Assembly (NCBI RefSeq): GCF_030684315.1
Contig: NC_081387.1
Location: 6,242,497-6,306,496 of the forward strand
From: Stegostoma tigrinum
Taxonomy: Eukaryota
Direction of reading: 5' to 3'
Length of the DNA: 64,000 nucleotides
Part shown: in pieces, positions 9,001 to 44,600 of the stretch
How the letters are laid out: each line of letters starts with the position of its first letter
Numbering within the stretch: the first letter of the stretch is position 1
Notes under the pieces: model-generated
Databases searched by the model: none
Seen by the model: the letters and a program-made list of their open reading frames with translations, nothing else
What the model was told of the DNA's origin: nothing
Made by a program: the position numbers and the translations under genes

Positions 9001-12000
9001 TTGACTTACTTTTTCTGCTTAAAGAGGCATTTCCAATTGAATAGTACGTCTTCCATAGATCTGGACAGTCATTTTCTAACAGGCTCTTGAAATAATGGTT
9101 CATCTTTGTTTCCTTATCCCATTTCTCTTTGAATTCTTTTGCAAACTTATCATGTATAATCCACACCAATGTATCTTTATCAAAACTGAGGATGTATCTG
9201 CCATCAAACGCAAACTTCAAAATCCCTTCATTCGGATCGGCATCATGCAGCTCACAGCCAAACAGTCCTTGCAGGTAATGGGTACCTAAACATTAATTCA
9301 GTCAATGAGCCCTTAAATATTCATTGCATCTGATCAAAACAAATCTGACAATTTTGGTTTATCATTTGATCCTTCATATCCAGCAGTACATTAAACAAGT
9401 GTACAAGCATTATTACACAGGATGATAGAAGTACAGCACAACAGCGAGAGCTTTAACAGTTGCCATCACAGACAGCCCAAGGGTACGGAAAGGCAGGAGA
9501 TGCAGGGAGGTGGGAGCGGGGGTTTGAGATGGAATTCGAGGATGGGGGTGGATGTAGCACTTGAAAGACAAGTGCAGTTAAAGCCACAACCAGCTCATTC
9601 ATAATCTCATTGATGGAGGAGCAGGACTGGTTCAATGGTTTCCTCCATGTATTACATTGCATAGTTGGGCTCAAAACTGCTGTCTGCAGTGATTTTCCTC
9701 TGCTAAATGAATGCATGCATTATGTTCAGTTCTTAATAGTGTTGCAACAATAGTTTTGGTAATCATACAATTGATACTTGGGAGAATTTTCTTAAAATAA
9801 TCCAGATTTTCACTGGTACTCTCAAGTGTCAGGCATGTCCCTTATTAATAATCAGCTGACCCTGGGAAATACCCAGTCTCTGATTTTATCTAATTTTATT
9901 AAACATTTGAATTCATCTATTTCTGTGAAAATACATTTGACTTCACAACTACAATACAGTGCCTCCTTCCAATTCGATCACTCCTCTGCAGCAAGTATTC
10001 TTGCTTAGTTTCTCAAACCACTTGCAGGATTATAAAAGAGCATCTGAGGTTTTCTTTAGGCCAGAGTCCCATATATCCATTTATTGTTTCAGGTGTAATG
10101 CTGCAATCTGCTGTCCATATTTCCCCGATGTTAAAATTAAAAAGTCTCCTGGTAGCTAAGTTCCAATTGAACTAAGTTGAAAAATCAGTGAGCACAATCA
10201 GACAGCCATGCACCCTATTCAGCGACAGTTTGAGTTGCAAATGTGAGGAGGAGGAGTGATAGTTTCTTTAGACTATTAATCCACAAGTGCAGCTAATGTT
10301 CTGGGTATGCAAGGCAGATGTTTGAGTTTGAATTCAACCAAAATATCAGGAAGTCACTGTCAATTCATGAAAAACCCACCTGTTCACTAACATTTTCAGG
10401 GAAGGAGATAAAACTCTCACCACCTGGTCTGGCCTACACGTGACTCCAGACCCACAGTAATGTGGTTGACCCTCAACAGCCCTCTGAAATGGCCCAGGAA
10501 GCCATTTGGGAGTAATCAATCACTATGAAGTCTCAACAAAGAAGACGGAGGTGCTAGGACAGGTGTTCAAGCTCCTGGCTCCTCTATTCACATGACCAAC
10601 TGCACCTTCTTGCAAAAATTTTCAATTTTCTTCGTTTGACTATTGAATCAAATTCATTTTGTTGGATGTGAGTTTGCTCGCTGAGCGGGAAGGTTAGTTT
10701 TCAGACGTTTCGTCATCTTTTTTATTTGAAAAAATATACTTTATTCATAGATGTACAAAATAATAAAACATTTCTGCACCTACCCAGTCATGCAGGCCGC
10801 TCCGGGTTACCCGGGGGTACGTACACCAACTAAAGGAAAAAAACAAAACAGAGAAAAAGAAACAAAAACAAAGAAAAAATTACCCTGGCAGTCGTCTCCC
10901 GCACAGTCCCCGTTGGCCCCCTGACCAATTGGGGAAGGCGCCAGCTGGGCCCAGTTACCAGATAGGATTCTTTTCCCTTTTCTGGACGAGGGGTTTCATA
11001 CGGTGGTCTTTCCCCACCACGCCTTGGCGGCGGCTGCCCCAAGCTTTAGCGCGTCCCTCAGCACGTAGTCCTGGACCTTGGAGTGCGCCAGTCTGCAACA
11101 CTCGGTCGGGGTCAGTTCTTTCAGCTGGAAGACCAGCAAGTTGCGGGCAGACCAAAGAGAGTCTTTCACCGCATTGATGGTCCTCCAGGCGCAGTTGATG
11201 TTGGTCTCGGTGTGCGTCCCGGGAAACAGCCAGTACAGCACGGAGTCCCACGTCACGGAGCTGCTCGGGACGAACCTTGACAAATACCACTGCATCCCCC
11301 TCCAGACCTCCTGCGCATAGGCACACTCCAGAAGGAGGTGATCGACAGTCTCGTCCCCCCCCCTGCAGCCGCCTCGAGGGCAGCGTGTGGTGGCGCAGAG
11401 TTTCCGGGCATGCATAAAGGATCTCATTGGCAGAGCCCCTCTCACCGCCAGCCAAGCAATGTCCTTGAGCTTGTTTGAAAGTTCTGGCGATGAGGCATTC
11501 TGCCAAACAACCTTGGCAGTCTGCGTGGGGAACCATACGACGGGATCCACCCTCTCCTTGTCCCAAAGGGTCTCAAGGATACTATGTGCTGACCACTGCC
11601 TGACGGCCTTGTGGTCAAAGGTGTTTCCTTTCAAAAATTTCTCCACGAAGGACAGGTGGTACGGGACGGTCCAACTACTCAGAGCGTTCCGCGGCAACGA
11701 GGCCAGGCCCATCCTTCGCAACACCGGGGACAGGTAGAACCTCAGTAAGTAGTGACACTTGGTGTTTGCGTACTGAGGATCTACGCACAGCTTGATGCAG
11801 CCGCACACAAAGGTAGCCAACAGGGCGAGGGTGGCATTCGGTACATCCTTCCCCCCATTTTCCAGGTCTTTGTACATGGTGTCCCTGTGGACCCGGTCCA
11901 TCCTCGACCCCCAAATGAAGTGGAAGATGGCCTGGGTGACCGCAGCGGAGCAGGTCCAGGGAATAGGCCAGGCCTGCGCCACATACAACAGTACCGAAAG

Positions 12001-15000
12001 GCCCATCGCACCTGACAACCAGGTTCTTACCCACGATGGAGAGGGACCGGAGCGACAACTGCCCAGCTTCTGCTTCAGTTTGGTGATACCCTCCTCCCAC
12101 ATCTTAGTGCATGCCCCAGCTTCACCGAACCAAACACCCAGCACCTTCAGGTAGTCTGTCCTGACGGTGAAGGGGATGAAGGAGCGGTCGTCCCTGTTCG
12201 CGAAGAACATGGCCTCGCTCTTACCCCTATTGACTTTGGCACCCGAGGCCAGTTCAAACTGGCCGCAGATGTCCAACAGCCTACTCACCGACCGACGATC
12301 AGTGCAGAAGACGGCGACGTTGTCCATGTACAGGGAGGTCTTGACCTGCAGGCCTCCGCTGCGTGGGATAGTCACGCCCTTCAGGCTCACGTCCTTCCTG
12401 ATGGATGTGGCGAAGGGCTCCATACAGCACACGAACAAGTCAGGAGAGAGCGGGCAGCCCTGCCTGACTCCAGATCTGACGGGAAAACTGTCCGATTCCC
12501 ACCCATTGATCGAGACTGCGCTAACGACGTTGGTGTAGACCAGCTGGATCCAATTGTGGATGCCCTCCCCGAATCCCAATTTGGAGATGACGTCCCTCAT
12601 GTAAGCATGAGAGACCCTGTCGAAGGCCTTCTCCTGGTCTAGGCTGACGAGGCAGGTGTCCACCCGCCTGTCCTGTACGTAGGCGATTGTATCCCTGATG
12701 AGCGCGAGGCTCTCAGTGATCTTCCTGCCCGGCACAGCACAGGTTTGGTCAGGGTGAATCACCGACTCCAGGACAGACCTGACCTGGTTGGCTCTGACCT
12801 TGGTCAGGATTTTGTCGTCCACATTCAAAAGTGAAGTGGGACGCCAATTCTTAATTTCTTCCCCCTCCCCCTTCCTCTTGTAAATGAGGGTGATGATGCC
12901 CTTCCTCATGGACTTGGACATTGCCCCTGCCCAAAGCGCACTATCGTACACCTCCAGCAGGTCCTGGCCGACCAGGTCCCAGAGTGCAGAATACAGCTCG
13001 ACCAGTAAGCCGTCACTCCCAGGAGTCTTATTCGTCTCCAAGGACTTGAGGGCTCTGGTCAGCTCATCCAGGGATATCGGCCGGTCCAGCCACTCCCTTG
13101 TGCTGTCATCTAAGAGCTCCGTGATAGACGACAGGGACGACTCAGAGGCCGTGCTGTCCCTGGGCTTCGCGTTGTACAGTCCAGCATAGAAGCATCTGCT
13201 GATCCTCAAAATGTCCGGCCGAGACGATGTCACCGAGCCGTCATCCTCCTTCAGCCAGCTAAGCACAGAGCTCTCTTTGTGCATCTTCTGAAAGAAGAAA
13301 CGCGAGCACGTCTCGTCCTGCTCCACGGAGCGGACCCTGGACCAGAAGATTATCCTGGAGGCCTCCGCGGCGAAGAGCGAGGCTTGCTGGCCCCTCACCT
13401 CGCAGAGGTCCTCCGTGACATCGACCCCCATCGACTGCAGAAGGAGCAGGTTCTGCATCCTTTTCTGGAGTCGCGACAGCTTTCCCCACCGCTCTCTCAC
13501 CTTCCAAACACCCTTGAGGACAAAGAACCTCTTGATGTTCTCCTTCACTGTCTCCCACCAGTCGCCCGGAGACTCAAAGAGGGGTTTCACGGTTCTCCAA
13601 TCAACGTACTCCCTCTTGGGCTCCTCGTTGTTCTCTGGGGTCAACAGAGTCGTGTTGAGCTTCCACGTTCCCTTGCCAGCCTGCTGGTCATCCTGTAAGT
13701 GACAGTCGGCCAGCAGGAGGCAGTGGTCAGAGAAGAACACCGGCTTGACACCGGTGGACCTGACCGAGAACGCCCGTGACACAAACAGGAAGTCTATCCT
13801 TAAGCAGATAGAACCGTCTGGCCGCGACCAGGTGTATCTCCGCTGCGCTCCGTCCTTCACCATGCCCATCAGGAATTTGGATGTGACGTCCAGTTGACTC
13901 CCCCCACCCGCTGTCCCCACGCCGGATCTTCCATTTGCATCGATGATGCAGTTGAAGTCTCCGCCTAGGATGGCCGGCCTGGACGTAGCCAGCAGGGGTG
14001 GAAGCCACTGCAGGACAGCCAACCATTTACTCCGTACCGCTGGGGTTTACACATTGATCAGCCTCAGGGGAGTGTTCCTGTAGGTAACATCAGCCACTAG
14101 GAGGCGCCCCCCACCACCTCCTGAACTTGAGAGATGGTGAAGTTGCGCCCCCGCAGCAGAATAGTCAGGCCCGAGGAGCGACAGTCGTTACCCCCCGACC
14201 AGATCGAAGGCCCACAGGTCCAGGCGCCCGACCATTTCCCGTACCTGCCGAGGTGCGGTATCCCGCACTCCTGCAGAAACAGGAGGCCCGCCTTGATGGT
14301 GGTCAGGTAGGCCAACGTGGATACACATCTTGCGGTGGACTTGACGCTGCGCACATTAATGCTCGCAACTCGTACCCCCATTGTGGGCAGTGACCGCAAT
14401 ACCCTTCCCAAGTCCAAGGTCCAGCCCCTCCATCTGTCCCTTCATGCCAATTGCCCGGGCTAACTGCTGGACGCACTCCGGGCTCAGGAATACGGAGGCA
14501 GGAGAGTCCGGCTCTGGGTCAGGCTGGGGACGCGCTGTTTTCTCCTTCCCACCTGAAGGTTGCGGGGGGCCCTCCAGGTCCCCAGTGGCACGTGGCTGGG
14601 TGTCAGAGGGAGCCGCAGGACGCCTCCCGTCACCTGGAAGCAGGGTGCTGCTTTCCTTCTCCATTGAGATCTTTAGCTTCTGCTTTGGGCGGGCCTCCTC
14701 CGAATCTCCCTCGTCAGAGGAGCTCTTATAGCCCCCCTGTAGCTGCCTCTTCCCGCCTGATGGTTGCGGTACCTGGGCCCACGGGTGCGCCTTCCTCCTC
14801 GCCTTCCGGACCATCGTCCACTCCCCTGGGTCACCTGTCACCTCCTCCATCGACTCCGGGTTGTCGGGGGGGAGCGGAGCCTGCAGGGGCGCTTTGCGGG
14901 CCTCGGGTCCCTCCTGCGGGGCTGGTCCCTCCTGCACGACCTAGACCTCCTGCACATTAGGGGGGTCCTTGCAGGGGCCTGGTGCCTTCCTTTCCTCCAG

Positions 15001-18000
15001 GGGGGGCTTGCCCCGCATTGCCCATGCCGGCAACCTGGGCGTAGGTGGTCCCCCGCCGCGGGCATGCCCTATAGAAGTGGCCCGCTTCCCCACAAAGGTT
15101 GCAGCTTTTCTCTTGTGGGCAATCCTTTGCAAGGTGACCCTCCTTCCTGCAGTTCCTGCAGATGGTTGCAGTCGGCCGCCACGTGACCTGACCTACCGCA
15201 GGCATGGCAGACTTTCGGTTGCCCTGCGTAGGTCAGGGAGCCCTTGCTCCCGCCGATCGCGAAGCTGGATGGTGGGTGTATGATGTTCCCATCCGCGCCC
15301 ATCCTCAGCATCACCCTGACCTGCCTCTTACTGGTCCAGATGCCAAAGGGGTCCATGATGTCAGTTAGGTCCCCTTCCACCTTCGCGTACCTTCCAAGGA
15401 AGGTCAGGACATCAACTGCTGGCACATGCAGGTTGTACATGTGTACAGTCACCATACGGCTCCTCTGCGCTGGCATCACAAACAGCGGGACAGCGGTCAA
15501 TATAGAGAGGGGGCCCTCACCTCCTTTCTCCTTGAAAACCTCCAGGAAGCGCTCGCAAAGCTTGGCACGCCTGAAGGTCACGTCGTAAAAACCTCCTCCG
15601 GGGAAATCCTGCAGGCAGTAAATGTCCGCAGCAGCGAACCCACAACAGTCCAACAGGACCCTCTTCACGAAGAAGGTGCGGTCCACAGGTGCACCTTCAT
15701 CCACCTTCTTCACGGAAACGCGGATGGTGTTCCGGACCCCCTGACCTGGGGCACGAGCACTCGCCGCAGCCATCGTTGCAGGTTGGCTGCTCCCCTGAAC
15801 CAGCGTTAGGCCGAAGCCAGCATTAAGATCCACCAGTTGCAAGGGTGCACAGCCAACCCGACGTCTTCTTTCCAGCTCCAACAGTCGTGCTCTCCTCTTC
15901 TCGGTCCACAAAAGAGTGGGTCTTTATTTTGTTCTGGATGTAAGCTGGTTCACTGAGCTGGAAGGTTTGTTCCCAGACGTTTCATCACCTTTTTTTTTTA
16001 TTTGAAAAAATATACTTTATTCGTAAGATGTACAAAAAATAAAACATATTTACACACCTACCCAGTCATGCAAGCCGCTCCGGGTTACCCAGGGGGTACA
16101 TACACCAACTAAAGGAAAAAAAAACAAAACAGAAAAAAAAACAAAGCAAAGAAAAATACCCCAGCAGTCGTCACCCCGCACAGCCCCAGTTGGCCCCCTG
16201 ACCAGTTGGGGAAGGCGCCAGCTGGGCCCAGTTACCAGATAGGATTCTTTTCCCTTTTCTGGACGAGGGGGCTCATACGGTGGTCTTTCCCCACCGCGCC
16301 TTGGCGGCGGCTGCCCCAAGCTTTAGCGCGTCCCTCAGCACGTAGCCCTGGACCTTGGAGTGCGCCAGTCTGCAACACTCGGTCGGGGTCAGTTCTTTCA
16401 GCTGGCAGACCAGCAAGTTGCGGGCAGACCAAAGAGCGTCTTTCACCGCATTGATGGTCCTCCAGGCGCAGTTGATGTTGGTCTCGGTGTGCGTCCCGGG
16501 AAACAGCCCGTAGAGCATGGAGTCCCGCGTCACGGAGCTGCTCGGGACGAACCTCGACAAATACCACTGCATCCCCCTCCAGACCTCCTGCGCATAGGCA
16601 CACTCCACAAGGAGGTGATCAACAGTCTCGTCCCCCCCGCAGCCACCTCGAGGGCAGCGTGCGGTGGTGCAGAGATTCCGGGCATGCATAAAGGATCTCA
16701 CTGGCAGAGCCCCTCTCACCGCCAGCCAAGCAATGTCCTTGTGCTTGTTTGAAAGTTCTGGCGATGAGGCATTCTGCCAAACGACTTTGGCAGTCTGCAT
16801 GGGGAACCACACGACGGGATCCACCCTCTCCTTTTCCCGAAGGGTCCTGAGGATACTACGTGCTGACCACTGCCTGACGGCCTTGTGGTCAAAGGTGTTT
16901 CCTTTCAAAAATTTCTCCACGAAGGACAGGTGGTACGGAACGGTCCAACTACTCGGAGCGTTCCGCGGCAACGAGGCCAGGCCCATCCTTCGCAACACCG
17001 GGGACAGGTAGAACCTCAGTAAGTAGTGACACTTGGTGTTTGCGTACTGAGGATCTACGCACAGCTTGATGCAGCCACACACAAAGGTAGCCGTCAGGGC
17101 GAGGGTGGCGTTCGGTACACCCTTTCCCCCATTTCCCAGGTCTTTGTACATGGTATCTCTGCGGACCCGGTCCATCCTCGACCCCCAAATGAAGTGGAAG
17201 ATGGCCCGGGTGACCGCAGCGGCGCAGGTCCAGGTAATAGGCCAGGCCTGCGCCACATACAACAGTACCGAAAGCCCCTCGCACCTGACAACCAGGTTCT
17301 TACCCGCGATGGAGAGGGACCGGAGCGTCCACCTGCCCAGCTTCTGCTTAAATTTGGAGATACGCTCCTCCCAAGTCTTAGTGCATGCCCCAGCTCCACC
17401 AAACCAAACACCCAGCACCTTCAGGTAGTCTGTCCTGACGGTGAAGGGGATGAAGGAGCGGTCGTCCCAGTTCCCGAAGAACATGACCTCGCTCTTACCC
17501 CTATTGACTTTGGCACCCGAGGCCAGTTCAAACTGGCCGCAGATGTCCAACAGCCTACTCACCGACCGACGATCGGTGCAGAAGACGGCGACATCATCCA
17601 TGTACAGGGAGGTCTTGACCTGCAGGCCTCCGCTGCCTGGGATAGTCACGCCCCTCAGGCTCACGTCCTTCCTGATGGAGGCGGCGAAGGGCTCCACACA
17701 GCACACGAACAAGGCAGGAGAGAGCGGGCAGCCCTGCCTGACTCCAGATCTAACAGGAAAACTGTCTGATTCCCACCCGTTGATCGAGACTGCGCTAACG
17801 ATGTTGGCGTAGAGCAGCCGGATCCAATTGCGGATGCCCTCCCCGAACCCCAATTTGGAGAGGACGTCCCTCATGTAAGCATGAGAGACCCTGTCGAAGG
17901 CCTTCTCCTGGTCCAGGCTGACGAGGCAGGTGTCCACCCGCCTGTCCTGTACGTAGGCGATCATATCCCTGATGAGCGCGAGGCTCTCAGCGATCTTCCT

Positions 18001-21000
18001 GCCCGGCACAGCACAGGTTTGGTCAGGGTGAATCACCGACTCCAGGACAGACCTGACCCGGTTGGCAATGACCTTGGCCAGGATTTTGTAGTCCACGTTC
18101 AAAAGTGAAATGGGACGCCAATTCTTAATTTCTTCCCTCTCCCCCTTCCTCTTGTAAATGAGGGTGATGATGCCCTTCCTCATGGACTTGCACATTTCCC
18201 CTGCCCGAAGCGCACTATCGTACACCTCCAGCAGGTCCTGGCCGACCAGGCCCCACAGAGCAGAATACAGCTCGACCGGTAAGCCATCACTTCCGGGAGT
18301 CCTATTCCTCTGCAAGGACTTGAGGGCTCTGGCCAGCTCGTCCAGGGATATCGGCCGGTCCAGCCACTCCCTCGTGCCGTCGTCTAAGACCTCCGTGATA
18401 GACGACAGGAACGACTCGGAGGCCGTGCTGTCCGTGGGCTTCGTGTCGTACAGTCCGGCAGAGAAGGATCTGCTGATCCTCAAAACGTCGGGCCGAGACG
18501 ACGTCACCGAGCCGTCGTCCTCCTTCAGCCGGCTAAGCACAGAGCTCTCTTTGTGCACCTTCTGAAAGAAGAAACGCGAGCACGTCTCGTCCTGCTCCAC
18601 GGAGCGGACCCTGGACCGGAAGATTATCCTGGAGGCCTCCACGGCGAAGAGCGAGGCTTGCTGGCCCCTCACCTCGCGGAGGTCCTCCGTGACATCGACC
18701 CCCATCAACTGCAGAAGGAGCAGGTTCTGCACCCTTTTCTGGACTCGCGACAGCTTTCCCCGCCTCTCTCTTACCTTCTGAACACCCTTGAGGACAAAGA
18801 ACCTCTTGATGTTCTCCTTCACCGTCTCCCACCAGTCGCCTGGAGACTCAAAGAGGGGTTTCACGGTTCTCCAACCGGTGTACTCCCTCTTAAGCTCCTC
18901 GACGTTCTCTGGGGTCAACAGAGTCGTGTTGAGCTTCCACGTCCCCTTGCCGGCCGGCTGGTCGTCCTCTAAGTGACAGTCGGCCAACAGGAGGCAGTGG
19001 TCAGAGAAGAACACCGGCTCGACACCAGTGGATCTGACCGAGAACGTCCGTGACACAAACAGGAAGTCTATCCTTGAGCGGATAGACCCGTCTGGCCGCG
19101 ACCAGGTGTACCTCTGCTGCGCTCCGTCTGCAGGGGTGCTGAAGACGTCGAGCAGCTTAGCGTCCTTCACCGTGCCCATCAGGAATCTGGACGTGACGTC
19201 CAGTTGAATCCCCCCACCCGCTGTCCCCACGCCGGATCTTCCATCTGCATCAATGATGCAGTTGAAGTCTCCGCCTAGGATGACCGGCCTGGACGTAGCC
19301 AGCAGGGGTGGAAGCCGCTGCAGGACGTCCAACCGCTCACTCCGTATCACTGGGGCGTACACGTTGATCAGCCTCAGGGGAGCATTCCTGTAGGTGATGT
19401 CAGCCACTAGGAGGCGCCCCCCCACCACCTCCTGAACTTGAGAGATGGTGAAGTTGCGCCCCCGCAGCAGAATAGCCAGGCCCGAGGAGCGACAGTCGTT
19501 ACCCCCCGACCAGATCGAAGGCCCACAGGTCCAGGCGCCGGACCATTTCCCGTACCTGCCGAGGTGCGGTATCCCGCACTCCTGCAGAAACAGGAGGTCC
19601 GCCTTGATGGTGGTCAGGTAGGCCAACGTGGACACACATCTCGCGGTTGACTTGACGCTGCGCACATTAATGCTCGCAATTCGTACCCCCATTGTGGGCA
19701 GTGACCGCAGTACCCTCCCCAGGTCCAAGGTCCAGCCCCTCCATCTGTCCCTTCATGCCCATTGCCCGGGCTAACTGCTGGACGCTCTCTGGGCTCAGGA
19801 AACCATCTGTGCTGCCTTCCGGGTGGCATCCCCCCGCCAGGGGTGCGGAGGCAGGAGGGTCCGGCTCCGGATCAGGCTGGGGACTTGCTGTTTCCTCCTT
19901 CCCGCCTGGAAGTTCCGGGGGGCCCTCCAGTGCTCCAGCGGCACTTGACTGGGTGTCGGAGTGAGCCTCAGGACGCCTCCCGTCACCTGGAAGCGGGGTG
20001 CTGCTTTCCTTCCCCCTCGAGACCTTTAACTTCTGCTTCGGGTGGGCCCTCTCCGAATCCTCCTCGTCAGAGGAGCTCTTATAGCCCCCCTGTAGCTGCC
20101 TCTTCCCTCCTGATTGTTGCGGTTCCTGGGCCCGTCGACGCACCTTCCTCCTCGCTTTCCGGACTGTAGTCCACTCCCCTGGGCTGCCTGCCGCCGCCTC
20201 CATTGGCTCCGGGTTGTCGGGGGGGATCGGAGCCTGCAGGGGTGCTTTGCTGGCCTCGGGCCCATCCTGCAGGGCTGGGCCCTCCTGCACGGCCTGGCCC
20301 TCCTGCACATTAGTGGGGTCCTTGCTGGGCCCTGGTGCCTTCTTCTCCTCCGGGGGGCTGGCCCCGCATTGCCCCTGCCGGCGACCTGGGCGTAGGTGGT
20401 ACCCCGCCGCGGGCATGCCCTATAGAAGTGGCCCGCTTCCCCGCAAAGGTTGCAGCTTCTCTCTCGTGGGCAATCCTTTGCAAGGTGTCCCTCCTTCCTG
20501 CAGTTCCTGCAGATGGTGGCTTTGCAGTCGGCCACCACGTGACCTGACCTACCACAGGCATGGCAGACTTTAGGTTGCCCTGCATAGGTCAGGTAGCCCC
20601 TGCTCCCGCCGATCGCGAAGCTGGACGGTGGGTGTGCGACATTCCCGTCTGCGCCCATCCTCAGCGTCACCTTGACCTGCCTCTTACTCGTCCAGATGCC
20701 AAAGGGGTCCACGATGTCAGTTAGGTCCGCTTCTACCTTCACGTACCTTCCGAGGAAGGTCAGGACATCAACTGCTGGCACATGCGGATTGTACATGTGT
20801 ACAGTCACCATACGGCTCCTCTGCGCTGGCATCACAAACAGCGGGACAGCGGTCAATACCGAGAGGGGGCCCTCACCTCCTTTCTCCTTGAAAACCTCCA
20901 GGAAGCGCTCGCAAAGCTTGGCACTCCGGAAGGTCACGTCGTAAAAACCCCCTCCGGGGAAATCCTGCAGGCAGTAAATGTCCGCAGCAGCAAACTCACA

Positions 21001-24000
21001 ACAGTCCAACAGGACCCTCTTCACGAAGAAGGTGCGGTCCACAGGTGCACCTTCATCCACCTTCTTTACAGAAACACGGATGGTGTTCCGGACCCCCTGA
21101 CCTGGGGCACGAGCACTTGCCGCAGCCATCGTTGCAGGTTGGCTGCTCCCCTGAACCAGCGTTAGGCCGAAGCCAGCATTAAGATCCACTGGTCGCAAGG
21201 GTGCACAGCCAACCCAACGTCCTCCTTTCACCTCCAAGACAGCACTCTCGTCCTCTCAGTCCACAAGAGAGTGGGTCTTTATTGTGTTTGAGATGTAAGC
21301 TAGTTCACTGAGCTGTGAGGTTTGTCCCCAGATGTTTTGTCACCATTCTAGGTAACATCAACAGTGAGCCTCCGATGAAGCGCTGGTGCTATGTCCCACT
21401 TTCTATTTATCTGTTTAGGTTTCCTTGGATTGGTGATGTCATTTCCTGCATTGGTGATGTCATTTCCTGTTCTTTTTCTCAGAGGATGGTAGGTTGGCTC
21501 CGAATCAATCAACACATTGTCAACACAATCAACATCAACAAACCTAAACAGATAAATAGAAAGCGGGACATAACACCAGCGCTTCTTCGTAGACTCACTG
21601 ATGACGTTACCTAGAATGGTGACGAAACGTCTGAAAACTAACCTTTGAGCTCAGCGAGCAAACTCACATCCAGAAACTCAACCTGAGCTACAAATCTTCT
21701 CAAAACTCACTCATTCATTTTGTCTTCTGTGTCTGGCTGTAGTGGTGAGGAGAGGTTGCGGATAGCTGCTGAGCAGCTGATCCAGCCCATTCCTCATGGC
21801 CATGGCAATTGTGGCTTGAGCAACTGTCGAACCCTTGATGGCTTGGGGTTAGTCCTTCTCCTTGGAGTTTCAGAGGCAGAGTGAACGATCGCTCAATCCT
21901 CAGGAGTTCACTTGGATGGTCCTTCGGTCCTTGGAAGTTGAGAATGGGCCCCAGTCCTCAAGAGTTGGGACAGCCTCCATGTCTGGTGGCAGGTGCAGTA
22001 TCGGTAGCCATGAGGCAGCTTTGGCAGAGGTGACATCCTGGGTCTGGTCGGCGACTGTGCACACTGCTTCAGCACGCTTCCTCCTCAGTGTTGCGGCCTC
22101 AGGGCCAACTTTGCTGGATGTTGAGTAAGGCATAACTCATAGCTACTTCTGAAATCAAGAATCCATGGTTGGAGCAAAAAGTGGAATTTTTCTTCACTTT
22201 GTTTGCATTGTTTCTCTTTTATAGTGTATACAATTAAGATAGTGCTGGATTAATGGTGGCAGCTTATACACATTTTCATGAACACATAACAATAAATTAC
22301 TGTAGTAACATAATAATAAAGAAATGCAACAGGCTGGAGCATCAACCTAAGGACCGGAAATGACAATGGCAAAAACAGACCTGTCAGCATTGCAAAGTCC
22401 TCGCTACTAAGTCGGGAGTTTGTGCTAAAATTGGGTCAGCTGTCTCTCACTAGTCATACTAGACATAGTCATACTCATGGAATCATACCTTTTAAACAAT
22501 GAAACCAACAACACCTCCATCATCCCTGGATAGGTACTTTCCCACCAGCAGGGCAGAGCCAGTAAAGATGACAGCACAGTGGTATACAGTCATATGCTCC
22601 TCCATGTTGAAAGCACCTGGAAGAATCAGAGGGTGGCAAGGGCACAGAATGCACTTGGGTGCCCGATTTCAATGTCCACCACCCACAGTGGCTCAGTAGT
22701 ACGACTACTGATCAAGCTGGTTGGGTCCGAAAGGACATCACTGTCAGACAGGGTCTATGGCATGGGGTAAGGCAACCAACAAAAAGGGAGAAACATATTT
22801 GATCTTATCCTTACCAATCTGCTAGCTGCAGGTGCATCTGTCCATGACAGTTCCAGAAAGAGTGACCGCCGTACAGTCCTCTTGGAGATAATGTCTCCCT
22901 TTCACGTTAATAATACACTCCATCATGTGGTGTGGCATGACAATCATGCAAATTGGGTCAGGTTTTGAATAGATTAAGTGACTCAAGACTGGGCTTCCGT
23001 GAGGCAGTGTGGGTAATCAACAGCAGCAGAACTGTGCTCCAAAACAGTCTGCAACCTCATGGCTTGCAATATCCCTCACTCGACTATAGTCACTAAGCCA
23101 GGGGTTACCTCTAGTTCAATGGAGAATGCAGGAAGGCATGCCAGGAGAAGCACCAGGCACACCTAAAAATGAGCTGTCAATGTGGTGACATTACCAAATA
23201 GTGCTACTTGCATGCCAAACAGCATAAGCTGATATCCACAGCTAAGCAGTCCCACACCAATTGATCAGATCTAAGATCTGCAGTCCTGCCACGTCCAGTT
23301 GCTCATGGTGGTAAACAATTAAATAACTGACTGGAGAAAGAAGGCACCAAAATATCCCATCCTCAGTGATGGGTAAGCCCAACATGCCAGTGCAAAAAGA
23401 TAAACTTGGAGCATTCACAACAGTATTTGACCAGAAGTTCCGAGTAGATCATACATCTTGGTCTCATCTGGTGGTTCCCATCGTTACAGATTTCAGTCTT
23501 CAGCCAATTTAATTCTCTCCAGGTGACACCAATAAATGGCTGGAGGCACTGGAAACTATTAAGACTCTCGGTCCTGACAACATTCTGAAATAATATTGGA
23601 GACTTGTGGCCCAGAGACTTGTGCTGCTCCCTTAGTCAAGCTGTCCCAGCATAGCTGCAACACTGGCATCCCCCTGACACTATGGAAAATTGCCCAGTAT
23701 GTCTTGTACACAAAAGCAGGACAAATCCAACGCAATCAATTCCCACCCCCATCAGTCTACCCTCAATCATTAGTAAATTGATGGAAGATGTCCTTGGGAG
23801 GGTTATCAAGCAGCACATGCTCAGCAATAATCTGCTTAGTGATGCCCAGTTTGCATTCCGCCAGGGCCACTTGGCTCCCAAAATCATTACAGCCTTGGCT
23901 GAAACATGGACAAAAGAGCTGAATTCCACAGGTGAGACTGACCGAGCGTGACATCAAGGATGTCTAGAACAATTGGAATCAGTGGGAAATCTCTTTGCTG

Positions 24001-35649: not shown

Positions 35650-37510
35650 TCATAATAACAGCCGATGCTGGAGTCAGAGAGAACACAATGTCAAGCTGGA
35701 GGAACACGGCAGGCCAGGCAACATCAAAGGAGCAGTAAAGTTGATGTTTCAGGTCAGAAACCTTCTTCAGAAAACTCTGTGTCCCGACCCAAAACATCAA
35801 TTTCCCTGCTCCTCTGATGCTGTGTTCCTCTAACTCCACATTGCATTCTCTCTGACGTCAGCATCAGCAGTTATTACTATTTCTGAGTGTGCTGTAATCC
35901 CAATGCGAAACCCATTTTCCGAAGACATGTTGATATATGTGTATCTGTGTGTGAAAAATTATCGGTGGGTGAAAACCAGGCCTCCAGGAAATCTCGTGCT
36001 TGTATTTGCCTTGCTTGTCCTCGTCCTATAACTTTGTCCCAGTCAAATTGACGTCCCATGTCAGAGGGCATTGAAATGAGGGCGAATTGGTCGTGACGTT
36101 TTGTTGTGAGGTGGTGTTCATGTATCCTGGTGATGGGTTTCCTGCCCATCTGTCCTGTGTAGTGTTTCTAGTGGACTGCATGAAATCAGAGTGAGACCGA
36201 ACAACAGCCCTTCAGCAGAGGTTACATAGCACTGACAATGTCCCCTAGGAAGGAGATGAAACGTTTGCAAAAAAAAAGTCAGCTCAACAAACCAATCAGT
36301 AACTCCAACTGCAACCTGAGCTAATGGTTTTCAATAAATCATTAAACACGAGGCTAGATTGAGTGAAGTGCAGGTGTTGCTTCACCTGGAAGGTGTGTCT
36401 GGGACTTTGGAGGAGGTAAATACAGAGTGTTCTGTGGTTTTTGCCATGGGAGCGTGAGAAGGAATGGCAGAGGAGTGGACCAGAGTGTCCCAAAGGGATT
36501 GGTCCTTGCAGAACGCTGACAGGGAGGGGAGGGGAATATGTGTCTGGCTGTAGCATCCACTGGAGGTGATGGAAATGGCAGCTAATAGTCCTTTGGGTTT
36601 GGAGGCTGGTAGGGTGCTAGGTAAGAAACAGGGGGACTGTATCGCTGTTGTGATAGGGCGAGGGCAGAAGTGCAGGAGATGGGTCAAACATGGTATTGGA
36701 GAATCGGCGTTTGATGCAAAAGTTGGACATATCTGAAGAGCCCCTGTGGTCGGTGGCATCATCAGGACAGATGTCATGGAGATGGGGAAACTGGCAGATT
36801 GGGAAGGAGTCCCGACAGGAAACAAGGGTGAAGGGATACAGCTGAAGTAACTGTGGGAGTCAATGTGTTGGTGGCCAGTCTATTCCCAGAAATGGAAACA
36901 GAGATGTCAAGGAAAACAAGGGAGGAGTCAGGGATGGGCCATGTGAAAGTGAGGGCAGGGAGGTAAGTGGAAGCAAAATTGATAAAAACTTCCAATTCCA
37001 GAAGAGCGAGGGAAGCAGCACTGTTGATGTCATGGAGAAAGAGTTGTGAGGAGGGACACAAGGAGGACTGGATCAAGAAATGGTCCACAAACCCCACAAA
37101 AAGACAGGATTAACTGGGGCTCATGTGAATACTCATGGCCACAGCTTTGACCTGAAGAAAGTGTGAAGAGTTAAAGGAGAAGTTGTTCGAAGTGAGGATG
37201 AGCCAGGCAGAGGAGACTGGTATTGGATGGGCAAGGTTCAGGCTTTTTTTCCAGGAAGAAGCGGAGGACCCTGAGACCATCCTGATGAAGGAGATGGATG
37301 TGTGAAAAGATTGCACATTCATGGTGAAGAGGAGGTGACTGGAGCCTGCAAACTGGAAATTTTAAAACTGACATGAAGCATACAAGAAAGGGGTTAGACT
37401 TGGGGGCAAAAAATCGAAACAATGGACCAGTGCAGGTGGTACTGTTTGTGGATTTTGAAAAGAAGGTCGAAGCGGACTACACTGGGTTGGAGGATTATGA
37501 ACTGGGACTA
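35650..37510 (-). mobile_element. Old Penelope-like fragments (two families)
   Basis: GRKPITRIHEH...FDWDKV...ARDFLEAWFS (GIY-YIG C-terminal region); NNFSFNSSHFLQVKAVAM (RT); terminal-repeat remnants at ~35660-35870 and ~36190-36330. Confidence 0.75.
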
Positions 37511-41630: not shown

Positions 41631-44600
41631 GGAAAGCACAAACCAGCCCTCAGGTTATCCTGAATTCCTCACTCCTGGTAATCCCTGGTTAGCAGTGTCC
41701 ATTTAATATTTCTCTTCAATTTATTCCAGGTTTCTGTTCCAGGTTAGTGATTGCATCGGTGTGACCCGGCCACTGTTTCAGGTCAGCGATCTTCTGTTTC
41801 CTCCTCCAGTCCCTGGATTGTGGCCCAGCCTCTCCCCTGTGTCCACACTGATTCCATTGAGTGTCTCTGTGACTCTGATTCCGTGTTTACTCCCTGTTCT
41901 GAGAGGCTGCAGTATCTAATTCTGACCCAGTTCAATCTGATTCTGTTCATAATATCTGACAGGAATCTGACAGTGTGATGAAGTGGTGGATTATTGCAGA
42001 TTGGCACCATATGGGAGGGGCCTCATGAGGATGAGCTGGAAGTGTGTGTAAATGTTCATTAGCCTGTACCTAATATTTGATTTACAGAGACAACATGTTT
42101 AAAGTTAGTCTCTCACATTAGTGACGCCCTTGGGATTTGTGATGTTGCCACGGTCGGTGAAGCCCAAATACATGAATATGATGTTTTTCATGCTGGGCTT
42201 CAGTTACCAGCTACTTTCAATGTTTGCTTTACAGAGACTAATGTGCACACTGGGATTTACACAGCGGTTTCTGGAATTCAAGACTTGCCTGAGGTGATGC
42301 ATATGGCAATGGTCAATGGAATTAAAATAAGTTCTGGTGACAGTAAAACCGGTCAGTGCATCCCGAGGCAGCAGTTCATGGTAGAATCTTTCAATGCGAA
42401 ATTCTGGGATTCTGTCACAAGCATGGTGCACCAATGTGCAAACACAGCAAAGGAAATTTTGAGTACAATAATGAAGAGGACAAGCCAGACATCTGGTAAG
42501 GTGTCAGAGATAATGGGAACTGCAGATGCTGGAGAAACCGAGATAACAAAGTGTGGAGCTGGATGAACACAGCAGGCCAACCAGCATCTCAGGAGCACAA
42601 AAGCTGACGTTTTGGGCCCAGATGCTTCATCAGAAATGGGGGCGAGGGAGAGCGTTCTGAAATAAATAGGGAGAGAGGGGGAGGCAGATAGAGGATGGAT
42701 AGAGGAGAAGATAGGTGGAGAGGAGATAGACAGGTTAAAGAGCAGGGGATGGAGCCTGGAGAGGTGAGTGCAGGTGGGGAGGTAGGGAGGGGATAGGGCA
42801 AGGGGGGTGAGATGAGATTAATAGGAAGGAAATGAGGGTGCGGCTTGAGGTGGGAGAAGGGGACAGGTGAGAGGAGGAACAGGTTAGGGAGGGGGGAACA
42901 AGCTAGGCTGGTCTTGGGATGCAGTAGGGGGAGGGGAGATTTTGAAACTTGTGAAATCCACCTTGATACCATTGGGCTGCAGGGTTCCCAAGCGGAATAT
43001 GAGTTGCTGTTTCTGCAACCTTTGGGTGGCATCATTGTGGCACTGCAGGAGGCAAGGATGGACATGTAAGCGGTTCCCAAGCCTCCGCTTGGTTTCCCCA
43101 ATGTAGAAGAGGCCACACCGTGTACAGCGGATGCAGTATACCACATTGGCAGATGTGCAGGTGAACCTCTGCTTAATATGGAAAGTCTTCTTGGGGCCTG
43201 GGATGGGGGTGAAGGGGGAGGTGTGGGGGCAGGTGTAGCACTTCCTGTGGTTGCAGGGGAAGGTGTCGGGTGTGGTGGGGTTGGCGGACAAGGGAGTCCC
43301 AGAGAGAATGGTCCCTCCGGAAGGCAGGTAAGGGTAGGGATGGAAAAGTGTCTTTGGTGGTGGGGTCCGATTGCAGATGGCGGAAGTGTCAGAGGATGAT
43401 GTGTTGGATCCGGAGGTTTGTAGGGTGGTATGTGAGGACAAGGGGTACACTCTTTTGGTTGTTATTGCGGGGACGGGGTGTGAGGGATGAATTGCGGGAA
43501 ATGCAAGGGACATGGACAAGGGCATTCTCGACCACTGTGGGGGGGCGGGGGGAGGTTGCAGTCCTTGAAAAGCAAGAGCATCTGAGATGTACGGGAGAGG
43601 AATGCCTCATCCTGGGAGCAGATGCGGCGGAGGCGAAGTAATTAGGAAGAGGGAATGGCATTTTTGCAGGAAGGTGGGTGGGAGGACGTGTATTCTAGGT
43701 AGTTGTGGGAGTCAGTGGGCTTTAAATGGAGGTCAGAGATAATGGGAACTGCAGATGCTGGAGAATCCAAGATAATAAAATGTGGGGCTGGATGAACACA
43801 GCAGGCCAAGCAGCATCTCAGGAGCACAAAAGCTGACGTTTCGGGCCTAGACCCTTCATCAGGGAGGGGTATGGGGAGATGATTCTGAAATAAATAGGGA
43901 GAGAGGGGGAGGCGGACTGAAGATGGATAGAGGAGAAGATAGGTCGAAAGGAGAGTATGGGTGGGAAGGTAGGGAGGAGATAGGTCAGTCTAGGGAAGAC
44001 GGACAGGTCAAGGTGGCGGGATGAGGTGGTAGGTAGGAAATGGAGGTGCGGCTTGAGGTGGGAGGAAGGGATGGGTGAGAGGAAGAACAGGTTAGGCAGG
44101 TTGGGACGAGCTGGACTGGTTTTGGGATGCAGTGTGGGGAGGGGAGATTTTGAAGCTGGTGAAATCCACATTGATGCCATTGGGCCGCAGTGCTCCAAGC
44201 GGAATATGAGTTGCTGTTCCTGCAACCTACGGGTGGCATCATTATGGCACTGCAGGTGGCCCAGGATGGACATGTCTTCTGAGGAATAGGAGGGGTAGTT
44301 GAAATGGCTCACGACTGGGAGATGCAGCTGTTTACTGTGAACTGAGCATCGGTGTTCTGGAAAGCGGTCCCCAAGCCTCCGCTTGGTTTCCCAAATGTAG
44401 AGGAAGCCACACCGTGTACAATGGATGCAGTATACCACATTGGCGGATGTGCAGGTGAACATCTGCTTGATATGGAAAGTCTTCTTGGGGCCTGGGATGG
44501 GGGTGAAGGGGGAGGTGTGGGGGCAGGTGTAGCACTTCCTGTGGTTGCAGGGGAAGGTGTCGGGTGTGGTGGGGTTGGCGGACAAGGGAGTCCCAGAGAG

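What the first reader, a model, noticed from the sequence alone, without database searches (positions are those of the whole stretch)
10652..21723. Candidate sequence-specific Tx1 retrotransposon that targets the hammerhead-ribozyme motif of Penelope elements
Seen: two diverged full-length Tx1 copies lie head-to-tail, and all three junctions carry the same 16-mer (plus strand cagacgtttcgtcatc 10702-10717, cagacgtttcatcacc 15974-15989, cagatgttttgtcacc 21329-21344; most differences are CpG decay). Both poly(A) tails attach at the same base of this motif. The host element's other inverted arm (21598-21633) preserves an empty site, CTGATGAcGTTACCTAGAAT^GGTGACGAAACGTCTG, which places the insertion at the loop II/helix II boundary of a hammerhead-like core. 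Established: Tx1-clade LINEs are often target specific (Xenopus Tx1L in the Tx1D DNA transposon; others in U2 snRNA, 5S rRNA, tRNA spacers or microsatellites), and Penelope pseudo-LTRs carry minimal hammerheads. Inference: this family parasitises another retroelement through its conserved ribozyme sequence, an abundant safe harbour. I am not aware of this target having been described but cannot search for it.
Basis: partly seen in the sequence, partly recalled or inferred. Interest (0 to 1): 0.9.

Follow-up and report, generated by a model that had tools for sequence, protein, structure and literature searches.

The report
Shark LINE targeting a Penelope hammerhead
Two copies of a Tx1-type jumping gene sit head to tail at one exact bond inside the small hammerhead-ribozyme motif of a Penelope-like repeat in a shark genome, and each copy carries a piece of that repeat at its front end that rebuilds the motif, which looks like a new target for a group of elements already known to aim at other repeats.

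Summary
Two minus-strand LINE copies lie head to tail: A at 10718-15989 and B at 15990-21344. They are 93% identical. ORF1 has RNA-binding domains plus CCHC knuckles, and ORF2 has APE, RT and zf-RVT domains. Both poly(A) tails abut G of GGTGAYGAAACGTCTG. The other arm of the host inverted repeat keeps the empty site at 21617|21618.

The host motif has every hallmark of the published Penelope-type minimal hammerhead. The insertion lies between loop 2 and the 3' strand of helix II, 14 nt upstream of the predicted cleavage site.

New here: the shared flank is about 55 nt long, not 16. It is not a target-site duplication. The two "leaders" share differences from the local host sequence, so the element carries them and each insertion regenerates the full site.

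Contigs from public runs show the same poly(A)/GGTGAC junction in other copies and under a second species label. This argues against a single local accident.

Ribozyme-dependent 5' processing is an attractive idea but untested, because no RNA runs were available. I found no paper describing this target. The scan had already noted the same pattern on other pieces of this genome. Verdict: a new variant of the known target-specific Tx1 kind.

The parts
10663..10717 (-). Distal piece of the interrupted host arm. It holds the 3' half of the hammerhead (GATGACGAAACGTC) plus the tail to ACATCCA, directly after the poly(A) of copy A.
   Evidence: 94% identical to the right arm at 21620-21672; alignment A1.
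10718..15934 (-). Tx1-like copy A, body and poly(A). This is the older, more decayed copy, with 42-nt and 36-nt deletions relative to B. ORF2 fragment at 10996-14022 and ORF1 fragment at 15069-15911.
   Evidence: Pfam hits to Exo_endo_phos (partial), RVT_1, zf-RVT, ZCCHC3-type RBDs and zf-CCHC; alignment with B.
15935..15989 (-). 55-nt host-derived leader of copy A (GGTGAT...ACATCCA), joined directly to the poly(A) of copy B.
   Evidence: 81% identical to the host right arm but shares GG17-18, A22 and other states with leader B.
15990..21289 (-). Tx1-like copy B, body and poly(A). Mechanical ORFs: ORF2 at 16273-19728 (1151 aa) and ORF1 at 20026-21237 (403 aa).
   Evidence: Pfam hits to Exo_endo_phos, RVT_1, zf-RVT; two ZCCHC3-type RBDs plus CCHC knuckles. 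Relatives in amphibians, Takifugu and sharks.
21290..21344 (-). 55-nt host-derived leader of copy B (GGTGAC...ACATCTC).
   Evidence: Empty host copies in the reads diverge from it right after GTCTG: loose ends at 21329 in 57 contigs.
21331..21364 (-). Hammerhead rebuilt across the 5' junction of copy B. The host supplies CTGTTGA t GTTACC tagaat. The element supplies GGTGAC AAAA CATC. The core has since decayed at three positions.
21345..21422 (-). Proximal piece of the interrupted host arm, upstream of the insertion bond.
   Evidence: 91% identical to 21540-21617 in inverted orientation.
21423..21539 (.). 117-nt spacer between the two host arms.
21540..21708 (+). Intact host arm. Many other copies end their similarity at 21708 and some at 21672.
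   Evidence: loose ends at 21672 and 21708.
21598..21631 (+). Intact minimal hammerhead with the empty Tx1 site between 21617 and 21618. Predicted cleavage is after C21631.
   Evidence: Helix II hairpin in the MFE fold, z = -2.5.

Best explanation
This is a target-specific LINE of the L1/Tx1 group that integrates into one family of Penelope-type minimal hammerhead motifs.

Inferred mechanism: its APE endonuclease nicks the bottom strand at 5'-GTCACC^ATTCTA-3', which corresponds to top-strand TAGAAT^GGTGAC at the loop 2 / helix II boundary. Reverse transcription is primed from the poly(A).

Shown by sequence: the transposing RNA starts with about 55 nt derived from the Penelope-like element, running from the hammerhead 3' half (or its cleavage site) to the short-form 3' end ACATCCA. 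Each insertion therefore recreates a complete target and hammerhead at its own 5' junction. A later copy can enter that rebuilt site, which builds head-to-tail arrays with the youngest copy at the 5' end. Here B appears to have entered the site rebuilt by A.

Inferred roles of the leader: homology that seals the 5' junction, and possibly placement of the LINE behind the Penelope promoter and ribozyme.
For: - Same bond at two poly(A) junctions, one 5' junction and one empty site.
- Local host halves match the other arm at 91-94%. The leaders match it at only about 75-81% and share derived states with each other. They are therefore RNA-templated and not a target-site duplication.
- LINE domain architecture. 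A type-I ORF1 of RRM plus CCHC is described as consistent with the Tx1 clade (PMC5203782).
- In the reads, 7 contigs (organism A) and 1 contig (organism B) join the poly(A) to host-type sequence at 21618. At least 20 contigs bridge poly(A) into the motif at 15990. A contig from another sample bridges the 5' junction. 92,707 contigs were laid on the stretch.
- A and B differ at sites that are polymorphic across the family, in both directions.
- B, the 5' copy, has longer ORFs than A.
- The motif meets the min-HHR descriptors.
- Four hammerheads of another Penelope family and one decayed copy of a third family in the same window are unoccupied.
Against: - I could read only one locus directly.
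- The read evidence consists of short contigs from runs that may include the assembly's own sample.
- RT phylogeny against labelled Tx1 and L1 references was not possible.
- The host family was not linked to its own RT/GIY-YIG ORF.
- Rfam finds no hammerhead here. Published min-HHRs lack a loop 3, which may be why the Rfam models miss this one.
- The A-versus-B polymorphism argument could be blurred by recurrent CpG decay.
Confidence: 0.82

Rival explanations
1. Ribozyme hijack, an extension of the main reading. The LINE has no promoter of its own. It is co-transcribed from the Penelope pLTR, and the hammerhead rebuilt at the 5' junction cuts the transcript at GUC^UG. The LINE RNA would then begin at U15 of the motif, and the first 14 nt (GGTGACGAAACGTC) would be a true target-site duplication.
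For: Leader-specific differences from the host begin immediately after GTCTG, so the RNA 5' end lies at or before motif position 17 and the cleavage site at 14/15 fits. The 5'UTR before the first ATG of ORF1 is only about 215 nt. Helix I at the junction is 4 bp (CUCA/UGGG) against 3 bp in the host. R2 offers a precedent of ribozyme processing from a co-transcript, cited in PMC4494074 and PMC4209133.
Against: No RNA data were available. The 14-16 nt that would decide the question are invariant. Metazoan min-HHRs cleave poorly in vitro and need dimers. In Anolis PAc the hammerhead is protein-assisted, is dispensable for insertion in vitro, and no RNA-seq reads start at the cut site. Internal array members lack the 5' half of the ribozyme.
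Confidence: 0.25
2. One chance insertion followed by local tandem duplication, through unequal crossing-over between the leader and the downstream flank. There would be no target specificity.
For: Both copies lie in one locus. The 55-nt direct repeats could support unequal exchange. A and B share at least one allele that is rare in the family, at 17623.
Against: The spacer between A and B is leader-type from position 17 on, so any crossover would be confined to a 16-nt identical stretch. Other contigs, including one under a second species label, show the same poly(A)/GGTGAC bond next to host-type flanks. A and B each carry alleles shared with sizeable fractions of the family. Other pieces of this genome were independently noted with the same junction (those notes are unchecked).
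Confidence: 0.05
3. The 55-nt repeat is an unusually long target-site duplication made at each insertion. The element would carry no leader.
For: The structure [55 nt]-element-poly(A)-[55 nt] is formally what a long TSD looks like.
Against: Leader A differs from the adjacent flank at about 19% of positions, while that flank is 94% identical to the older paralogous arm. The two leaders share states that are absent from both local host copies.
Confidence: 0.05

Closest known systems
Target-specific Tx1-clade LINEs: Xenopus Tx1L in the piggyBac-type Tx1D; crocodilian Tx1-Mar in Mariner-N4_AMi; Tx1-9_AMi in Harbinger; Tx1-8_Crp and Tx1-4_AMi in LTR retrotransposons; Keno in U2; Kibi and Koshi in microsatellites (PMC4494074)
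   Same: APE plus RT LINE with an RRM/CCHC ORF1 and a poly(A) tail. Insertion is at a fixed position of another repeated sequence, including other transposable elements. Some Tx1 families carry foreign heads (U1/U2-derived) at the 5' end.
   Different: The target is a Penelope-like retroelement, specifically its hammerhead motif. The 5' head is homologous to the sequence just downstream of the element's own insertion site, so it rebuilds the target and the ribozyme. I found no report of this target. Repbase and Dfam could not be consulted.
R2 and other LINEs with HDV-like ribozymes at the 5' end (Eickbush & Eickbush 2010; Ruminski et al. 2011, as cited in PMC4209133 and PMC4494074)
   Same: A site-specific LINE with a self-cleaving ribozyme motif positioned at its 5' junction with the target. 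Co-transcription with the target is plausible.
   Different: R2 has a restriction-like endonuclease and encodes its own HDV-like ribozyme. Here the ribozyme would be a hammerhead, half supplied by the target and half by the element. Its activity is untested.
Penelope-like element minimal hammerheads (Cervera & De la Pena 2014, PMC4209133; Anolis PAc, PMC11167929)
   Same: The host motif has the CUGAUGA and GAAA boxes, an unpaired nucleotide after A9, a G10.1-C11.1 pair, a long helix II, no loop 3 with a palindromic ACGU, a short helix I, and pairs of copies on opposite strands 100-700 bp apart. As in PAc, an ATG inside CUGAUGA opens a reading frame that runs into the tail.
   Different: For this host family no RT/GIY-YIG ORF was seen in the window, and self-cleavage was not tested.

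Membership tests
Tx1 clade (L1 group) non-LTR retrotransposon | ORF2 with an N-terminal APE endonuclease, RT and a C-terminal zinc-binding domain | tested here: met
   Exo_endo_phos 1.3e-16, RVT_1 4.8e-39, zf-RVT 7.3e-11 in copy B.
Tx1 clade (L1 group) non-LTR retrotransposon | Type-I ORF1 (RNA-binding domains plus CCHC knuckles) rather than Transposase_22 | tested here: met
   RBD_ZCCHC3_1st, RBD_ZCCHC3_2nd, zf-CCHC and zf-CCHC_2 hits, with no Transposase_22. This architecture is described as consistent with the Tx1 clade in PMC5203782.
Tx1 clade (L1 group) non-LTR retrotransposon | RT phylogeny places it within Tx1 rather than L1 proper | not testable with these tools
   No labelled reference set was available. 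The nearest named relatives are unnamed amphibian proteins (45-48% identity) and Takifugu Q76B34 (36%). The Atlas gave only generic names.
Tx1 clade (L1 group) non-LTR retrotransposon | Target-specific insertion, using the PMC4494074 criterion that more than 20% of flanks belong to one sequence type | tested here: inconclusive
   All 3 junctions in the window and several read contigs share the bond. No genome-wide percentage could be computed.
Penelope-type minimal hammerhead (min-HHR) | Catalytic boxes CUGAUGA and GAAA, and a UH cleavage triplet | tested here: met
   21598-21631: CTGATGA ... GAAA CGTC^. 4 such motifs in the window against 0 in 50 shuffles.
Penelope-type minimal hammerhead (min-HHR) | [quoted passage not shown] | tested here: met
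   c | GTTACC/GGTGAC, 6 bp including one G-U. Descriptor taken from PMC4209133.
Penelope-type minimal hammerhead (min-HHR) | No loop 3, with palindromic 15.2-16.2 (dimer-type helix III) | tested here: met
   GAAA-CG-UC, palindrome ACGU.
Penelope-type minimal hammerhead (min-HHR) | Helix I of 4-5 bp | tested here: inconclusive
   Only 3 bp (UCA/UGA) in the host copy and 4 bp (CUCA/UGGG) at the Tx1 5' junction.
Penelope-type minimal hammerhead (min-HHR) | Located in the pLTR of an element that encodes RT plus GIY-YIG | tested here: inconclusive
   Not shown for the target family. Shown in the same window for another family: 1,294-bp units with a weak, sub-threshold GIY-YIG hit (42884-43525) and a weak RVT_1 hit (46406-48181), each unit carrying CTGATGA a GGGT ctag GCCC GAAA CGTC.
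Penelope-type minimal hammerhead (min-HHR) | Self-cleavage | not testable with these tools
   Needs in vitro transcription or RNA end mapping. No Rfam hammerhead model matched.
Ribozyme-processed co-transcribed LINE (R2-like mode) | Transcript reads through from the target, and the ribozyme defines the 5' end | not testable with these tools
   No RNA run holds the stretch.

The most novel reading that the evidence does not exclude
An APE-type LINE uses a split hammerhead. The target Penelope element supplies the promoter, helix I 5' strand, the CUGAUGA box and half of helix II. The 14-nt target duplication and the LINE's own leader supply the rest. Each integration would then assemble a ribozyme that trims the LINE RNA out of a Penelope-driven co-transcript. 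This would be the first hammerhead-processed LINE and a case of one retroelement borrowing another's catalytic RNA.
Probability: 0.25. Interest if true: 0.85.

Novelty: new variant of a known kind. Interest (0 to 1): 0.6.

Why it matters
Target-specific LINEs are models for how mobile elements find safe harbours, and they are starting points for programmable gene-insertion tools. Several constraints may act on this target at once: the ribozyme core, possibly the start of the Penelope ORF, and by analogy with Anolis PAc the Penelope tail. The target is also present in very many copies, so it would be hard for the target to mutate away. The self-regenerating target explains the head-to-tail arrays. 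It also gives a clean, testable prediction about whether a LINE can exploit another element's ribozyme and promoter.

Tried and rejected
- Rfam, at gathering thresholds on the whole window and at E<=10 on 21250-21750, gave no hammerhead family and only chance miRNA/snoRNA hits.
Related shark loci (Chiloscyllium, Heterodontus) could not be fetched to test the target in other species.
- A metagenome scan for poly(A)+GGTGAYGAAACGTCTG gave one hit in what reads like a bacterial coding sequence, taken as chance.
- The protein Atlas returned only generic RT clusters.
- No RNA runs were found, so expression and 5' ends could not be examined.
- Kojima & Fujiwara 2004 and Christensen et al. 2000 are not held. 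Details of Tx1L rest on PMC4494074 and on my own memory.
- My first hammerhead scan assumed no unpaired base after A9 and missed the motif. It was corrected after reading PMC4209133.
- The long-TSD reading and the single-duplication reading were considered and judged unlikely; see the rival explanations.
- TRF missed the 1,294-bp array because its maximum period is 500. The repeat finder found it.
Full report
**What is there**

On the minus strand the region reads as follows. First comes the host sequence ending ...CTGTTGA-T-GTTACC-TAGAAT (21364-21345). Copy B follows (21344-15990), then copy A (15989-10718). Last comes the host sequence GATGACGAAACGTCTGAAAAC...ACATCCA (10717-10663).

The 16-mer GGTGACGAAACGTCTG occurs four times at two or fewer mismatches, with one more distant match at 36252. 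Chance expectation is 0.35, and 0 of 100 shuffles reached 5 matches. Both poly(A) tails join the first G of the motif.

The copies are 5,272 and 5,355 nt long and 93.3% identical. About 72% of the mismatches are transitions, and many lie in CpG context.

Copy B has a 1,151-aa ORF2 with Exo_endo_phos, RVT_1 and zf-RVT domains. Its 403-aa ORF1 has two ZCCHC3-type RNA-binding domains and CCHC knuckles. Copy A has the same domains in shorter, broken frames and two in-frame-sized deletions of 42 and 36 nt. Other copies in the reads carry 1-nt differences relative to B at several ORF positions (table 4). I therefore do not claim that B is intact.

**The host**

Positions 21292-21422 and 21540-21670 are inverted-repeat arms, 84% complementary and 117 nt apart. 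The right arm carries the motif CTGATGA c GTTACC tagaat GGTGAC GAAA CGTC^TG at 21598-21633.

I read Cervera & De la Pena 2014 (PMC4209133) for the defining traits of the minimal hammerheads of Penelope-like elements (PLEs). The motif shows:
- both catalytic boxes;
- an unpaired base between A9 and 10.1;
- a G10.1-C11.1 pair;
- a long helix II of 6 bp;
- no loop 3, with a palindromic ACGU (dimer-type helix III);
- a GUC cleavage triplet;
- a short helix I;
- dual copies on opposite strands a few hundred bp apart.

A descriptor built from these traits finds 4 motifs in the window and 0 in 50 shuffles.

The other three motifs, plus a decayed fourth, sit once per unit in a 1,294-bp tandem array at 42.5-47.6 kb. 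That array gives a weak, sub-threshold GIY-YIG hit, and a weak RVT_1 hit lies upstream of it. In this very window, therefore, such motifs accompany what looks like a Penelope-like element, although of another family. For the target family itself no RT/GIY-YIG ORF was seen.

The ATG inside CUGAUGA opens a frame. In this copy the frame stops at TGA 21646-21648. Nearly all other copies read C at 21647. In Anolis PAc the ORF likewise starts at the hammerhead, and reverse transcription starts a little downstream at two adjacent sites (PMC11167929). Here other copies lose similarity at 21672 and at 21708, which may be the analogous two ends.

Rfam finds no hammerhead. Published min-HHRs lack a loop 3, which may be why the Rfam models miss this one.

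**Position of the insertion**

The bond is TAGAAT|GGTGAC, between loop 2 and the 3' strand of helix II. It lies 14 nt upstream of the predicted cleavage site and falls in codon 6 of the frame above.

The similarity among the three junctions runs for about 55 nt, from GGTGAC to ACATCCA (alignment A1). ACATCCA is exactly where the interrupted arm ends and where some other copies end (21672).

This repeat is not a target-site duplication. The flank after copy A is 94% identical to the right arm, and the proximal arm piece is 91% identical to it. The leaders of A and B match the right arm at only about 75-81%. They also share states that both local host copies lack: GG instead of AA at positions 17-18, A instead of T at position 22, and several more.

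The leader is therefore copied from the element's RNA. The RNA 5' end must lie at or before motif position 17. The switch from "same in all" to "leader-specific" falls right after GTCTG, and 57 read contigs from empty host copies break away from leader B at 21329, the same point.

One consequence follows from sequence alone. Every insertion recreates the full site, and a full hammerhead, at its 5' junction (21331-21364). This explains head-to-tail arrays that grow at the 5' end. It fits B, the 5' copy, being better preserved than A.

**Is it more than one local accident?**

I laid contigs from four public runs on 15900-21760. The family is highly repeated: 92,707 contigs from run X1 were laid.
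- Seven X1 contigs and one contig from X6, which carries a different species label, join the poly(A) at 15992 to 21618 on the opposite strand. That is poly(A) followed by host-type GGTGACGAAAC... at exactly the same bond. One of the seven may be the window's own 10717/10718 junction.
- At least 20 contigs cross 15990 with 1-2 fewer T, which indicates a tandem or motif-adjacent arrangement elsewhere.
- A 392-nt contig from X5, a small run from another study, bridges the 5' junction.
- No pile of loose ends at 15990 appears among the supported rows.

At sites where the reads show family-wide polymorphism, A carries minority alleles at 20204 and 20206 (about 27% of depth). B carries minority alleles at, for example, 19208 (a transversion, about 21%). 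This favours two insertions from different source copies.

A tandem duplication by unequal exchange would also need its crossover inside the 16-nt identical stretch, because the A-B spacer is leader-type from position 17 on.

Caveats apply. The contigs are short. X1-X4 may be the assembly's own sample. Depth is not copy number. CpG recurrence can mimic shared polymorphism.

Earlier notes from this scan report the same pattern on at least eight other pieces of this genome, and one was followed up with the same verdict. I treat these as leads, not as evidence.

**Specificity**

The four hammerheads of the other Penelope family (helix II GGGT/GCCC) are unoccupied. So is a decayed copy of a third family at 36231-36267. 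In the target family, one of two arms is occupied. The sample is small, but it suggests that recognition includes the family-specific loop 2 / helix II sequence and not only the universal core.

**Mechanism**

Shown: the fixed bond, the poly(A) junction, the RNA-templated host-derived leader, and the regenerated site.

Inferred from knowledge of APE LINEs:
- a bottom-strand nick at GTCACC^ATTCTA, followed by target-primed reverse transcription;
- 5' joining helped by homology between the leader cDNA and the target downstream sequence.

Hypothesis, which I put at about 25%: the element is transcribed from the Penelope pLTR, and the rebuilt hammerhead cuts at GUC^UG. The first 14 nt would then be a real target-site duplication.
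- For: the position of the divergence switch, the short 5'UTR (about 215 nt before the first ATG of ORF1), and one extra base pair in helix I at the junction.
- Against: there are no RNA data; min-HHRs are weak and work as dimers; and PAc shows no reads starting at the cut site and no need for cleavage in vitro.
- An ancestral template switch onto a hammerhead-cleaved Penelope RNA would also give a leader that begins at the cut site. Template switching is the proposed origin of the U1/U2 heads on SINEU elements, and some crocodilian Tx1 families carry the same kind of head (PMC4494074).

**Comparison and novelty**

Tx1-clade families are known to target piggyBac, Mariner and Harbinger DNA transposons, LTR retrotransposons, microsatellites, satellites, and U2, U5 and 5S genes (PMC4494074). 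A Penelope hammerhead target was not found in four full-text searches. Repbase and Dfam could not be checked.

Clade assignment rests on domain architecture and on the nearest relatives: amphibians at 45-48% identity, Takifugu Q76B34 at 36%, and shark and ray ORF1s at 45-78%. No labelled phylogeny was possible.

I class this as a new variant of a known kind. It is solid as a target-specific LINE and speculative as a ribozyme hijacker.

**Tools**

Noticed in passing
window 42503-47620, minus strand; RT-like ORF 46406-48181: A tandem array of four 1,294-bp units (the three upstream units match one another at up to 100%; the 3'-terminal unit is more diverged) gives a weak, sub-threshold GIY-YIG hit (ORF 42884-43525). 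A weak RVT_1 hit lies upstream. Each unit carries a minimal hammerhead, CTGATGA a GGGT ctag GCCC GAAA CGTC. It is intact at 43835-43862, 45129-45156 and 46423-46450 and decayed at about 42603-42632. None is occupied by the Tx1 element.
   Followed up: partly
window 36231-36345, plus strand: A decayed hammerhead-bearing fragment of a third family (CTGACAA t GTCCCC ... GGAGAT GAAACGTT). Its downstream part (AACCTGAGCTA...) resembles the long tail of the target family. It is unoccupied.
   Followed up: partly
window 57049-58260, plus strand (further ORFs to 59629): Another reverse-transcriptase ORF (RVT_1, E = 7e-27), unrelated at the DNA level to the Tx1 copies. It is probably a different LINE. 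Not classified.
   Followed up: no
window 21601-21708, plus strand: The ATG inside the CUGAUGA box opens a frame through the hammerhead and the tail. The local copy has TGA at 21646-21648, where nearly all other genomic copies read C at 21647. The peptide stretch around K-R-L (encoded by GAAACGTCTG) recurs in the 36.2-kb fragment.
   Followed up: partly
Read-laying run X10 (organism C), window 16288-18892: Only ten contigs were laid, 8 of them at >=99% identity. They cover just the ORF2 part at depth 3-6, in a run under a different species label. This could be low-level cross-sample carry-over or a very recent shared element. Unexplained.
   Followed up: no
window 10640-10662 versus 15915-15934: Just beyond ACATCCA, the flank of the interrupted arm (ACAAAATGAA) and the Tx1 sequence after the leader (ACAAAATAAA) share about 10 nt. 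The host-derived part of the Tx1 5' end may therefore be slightly longer than 55 nt.
   Followed up: no
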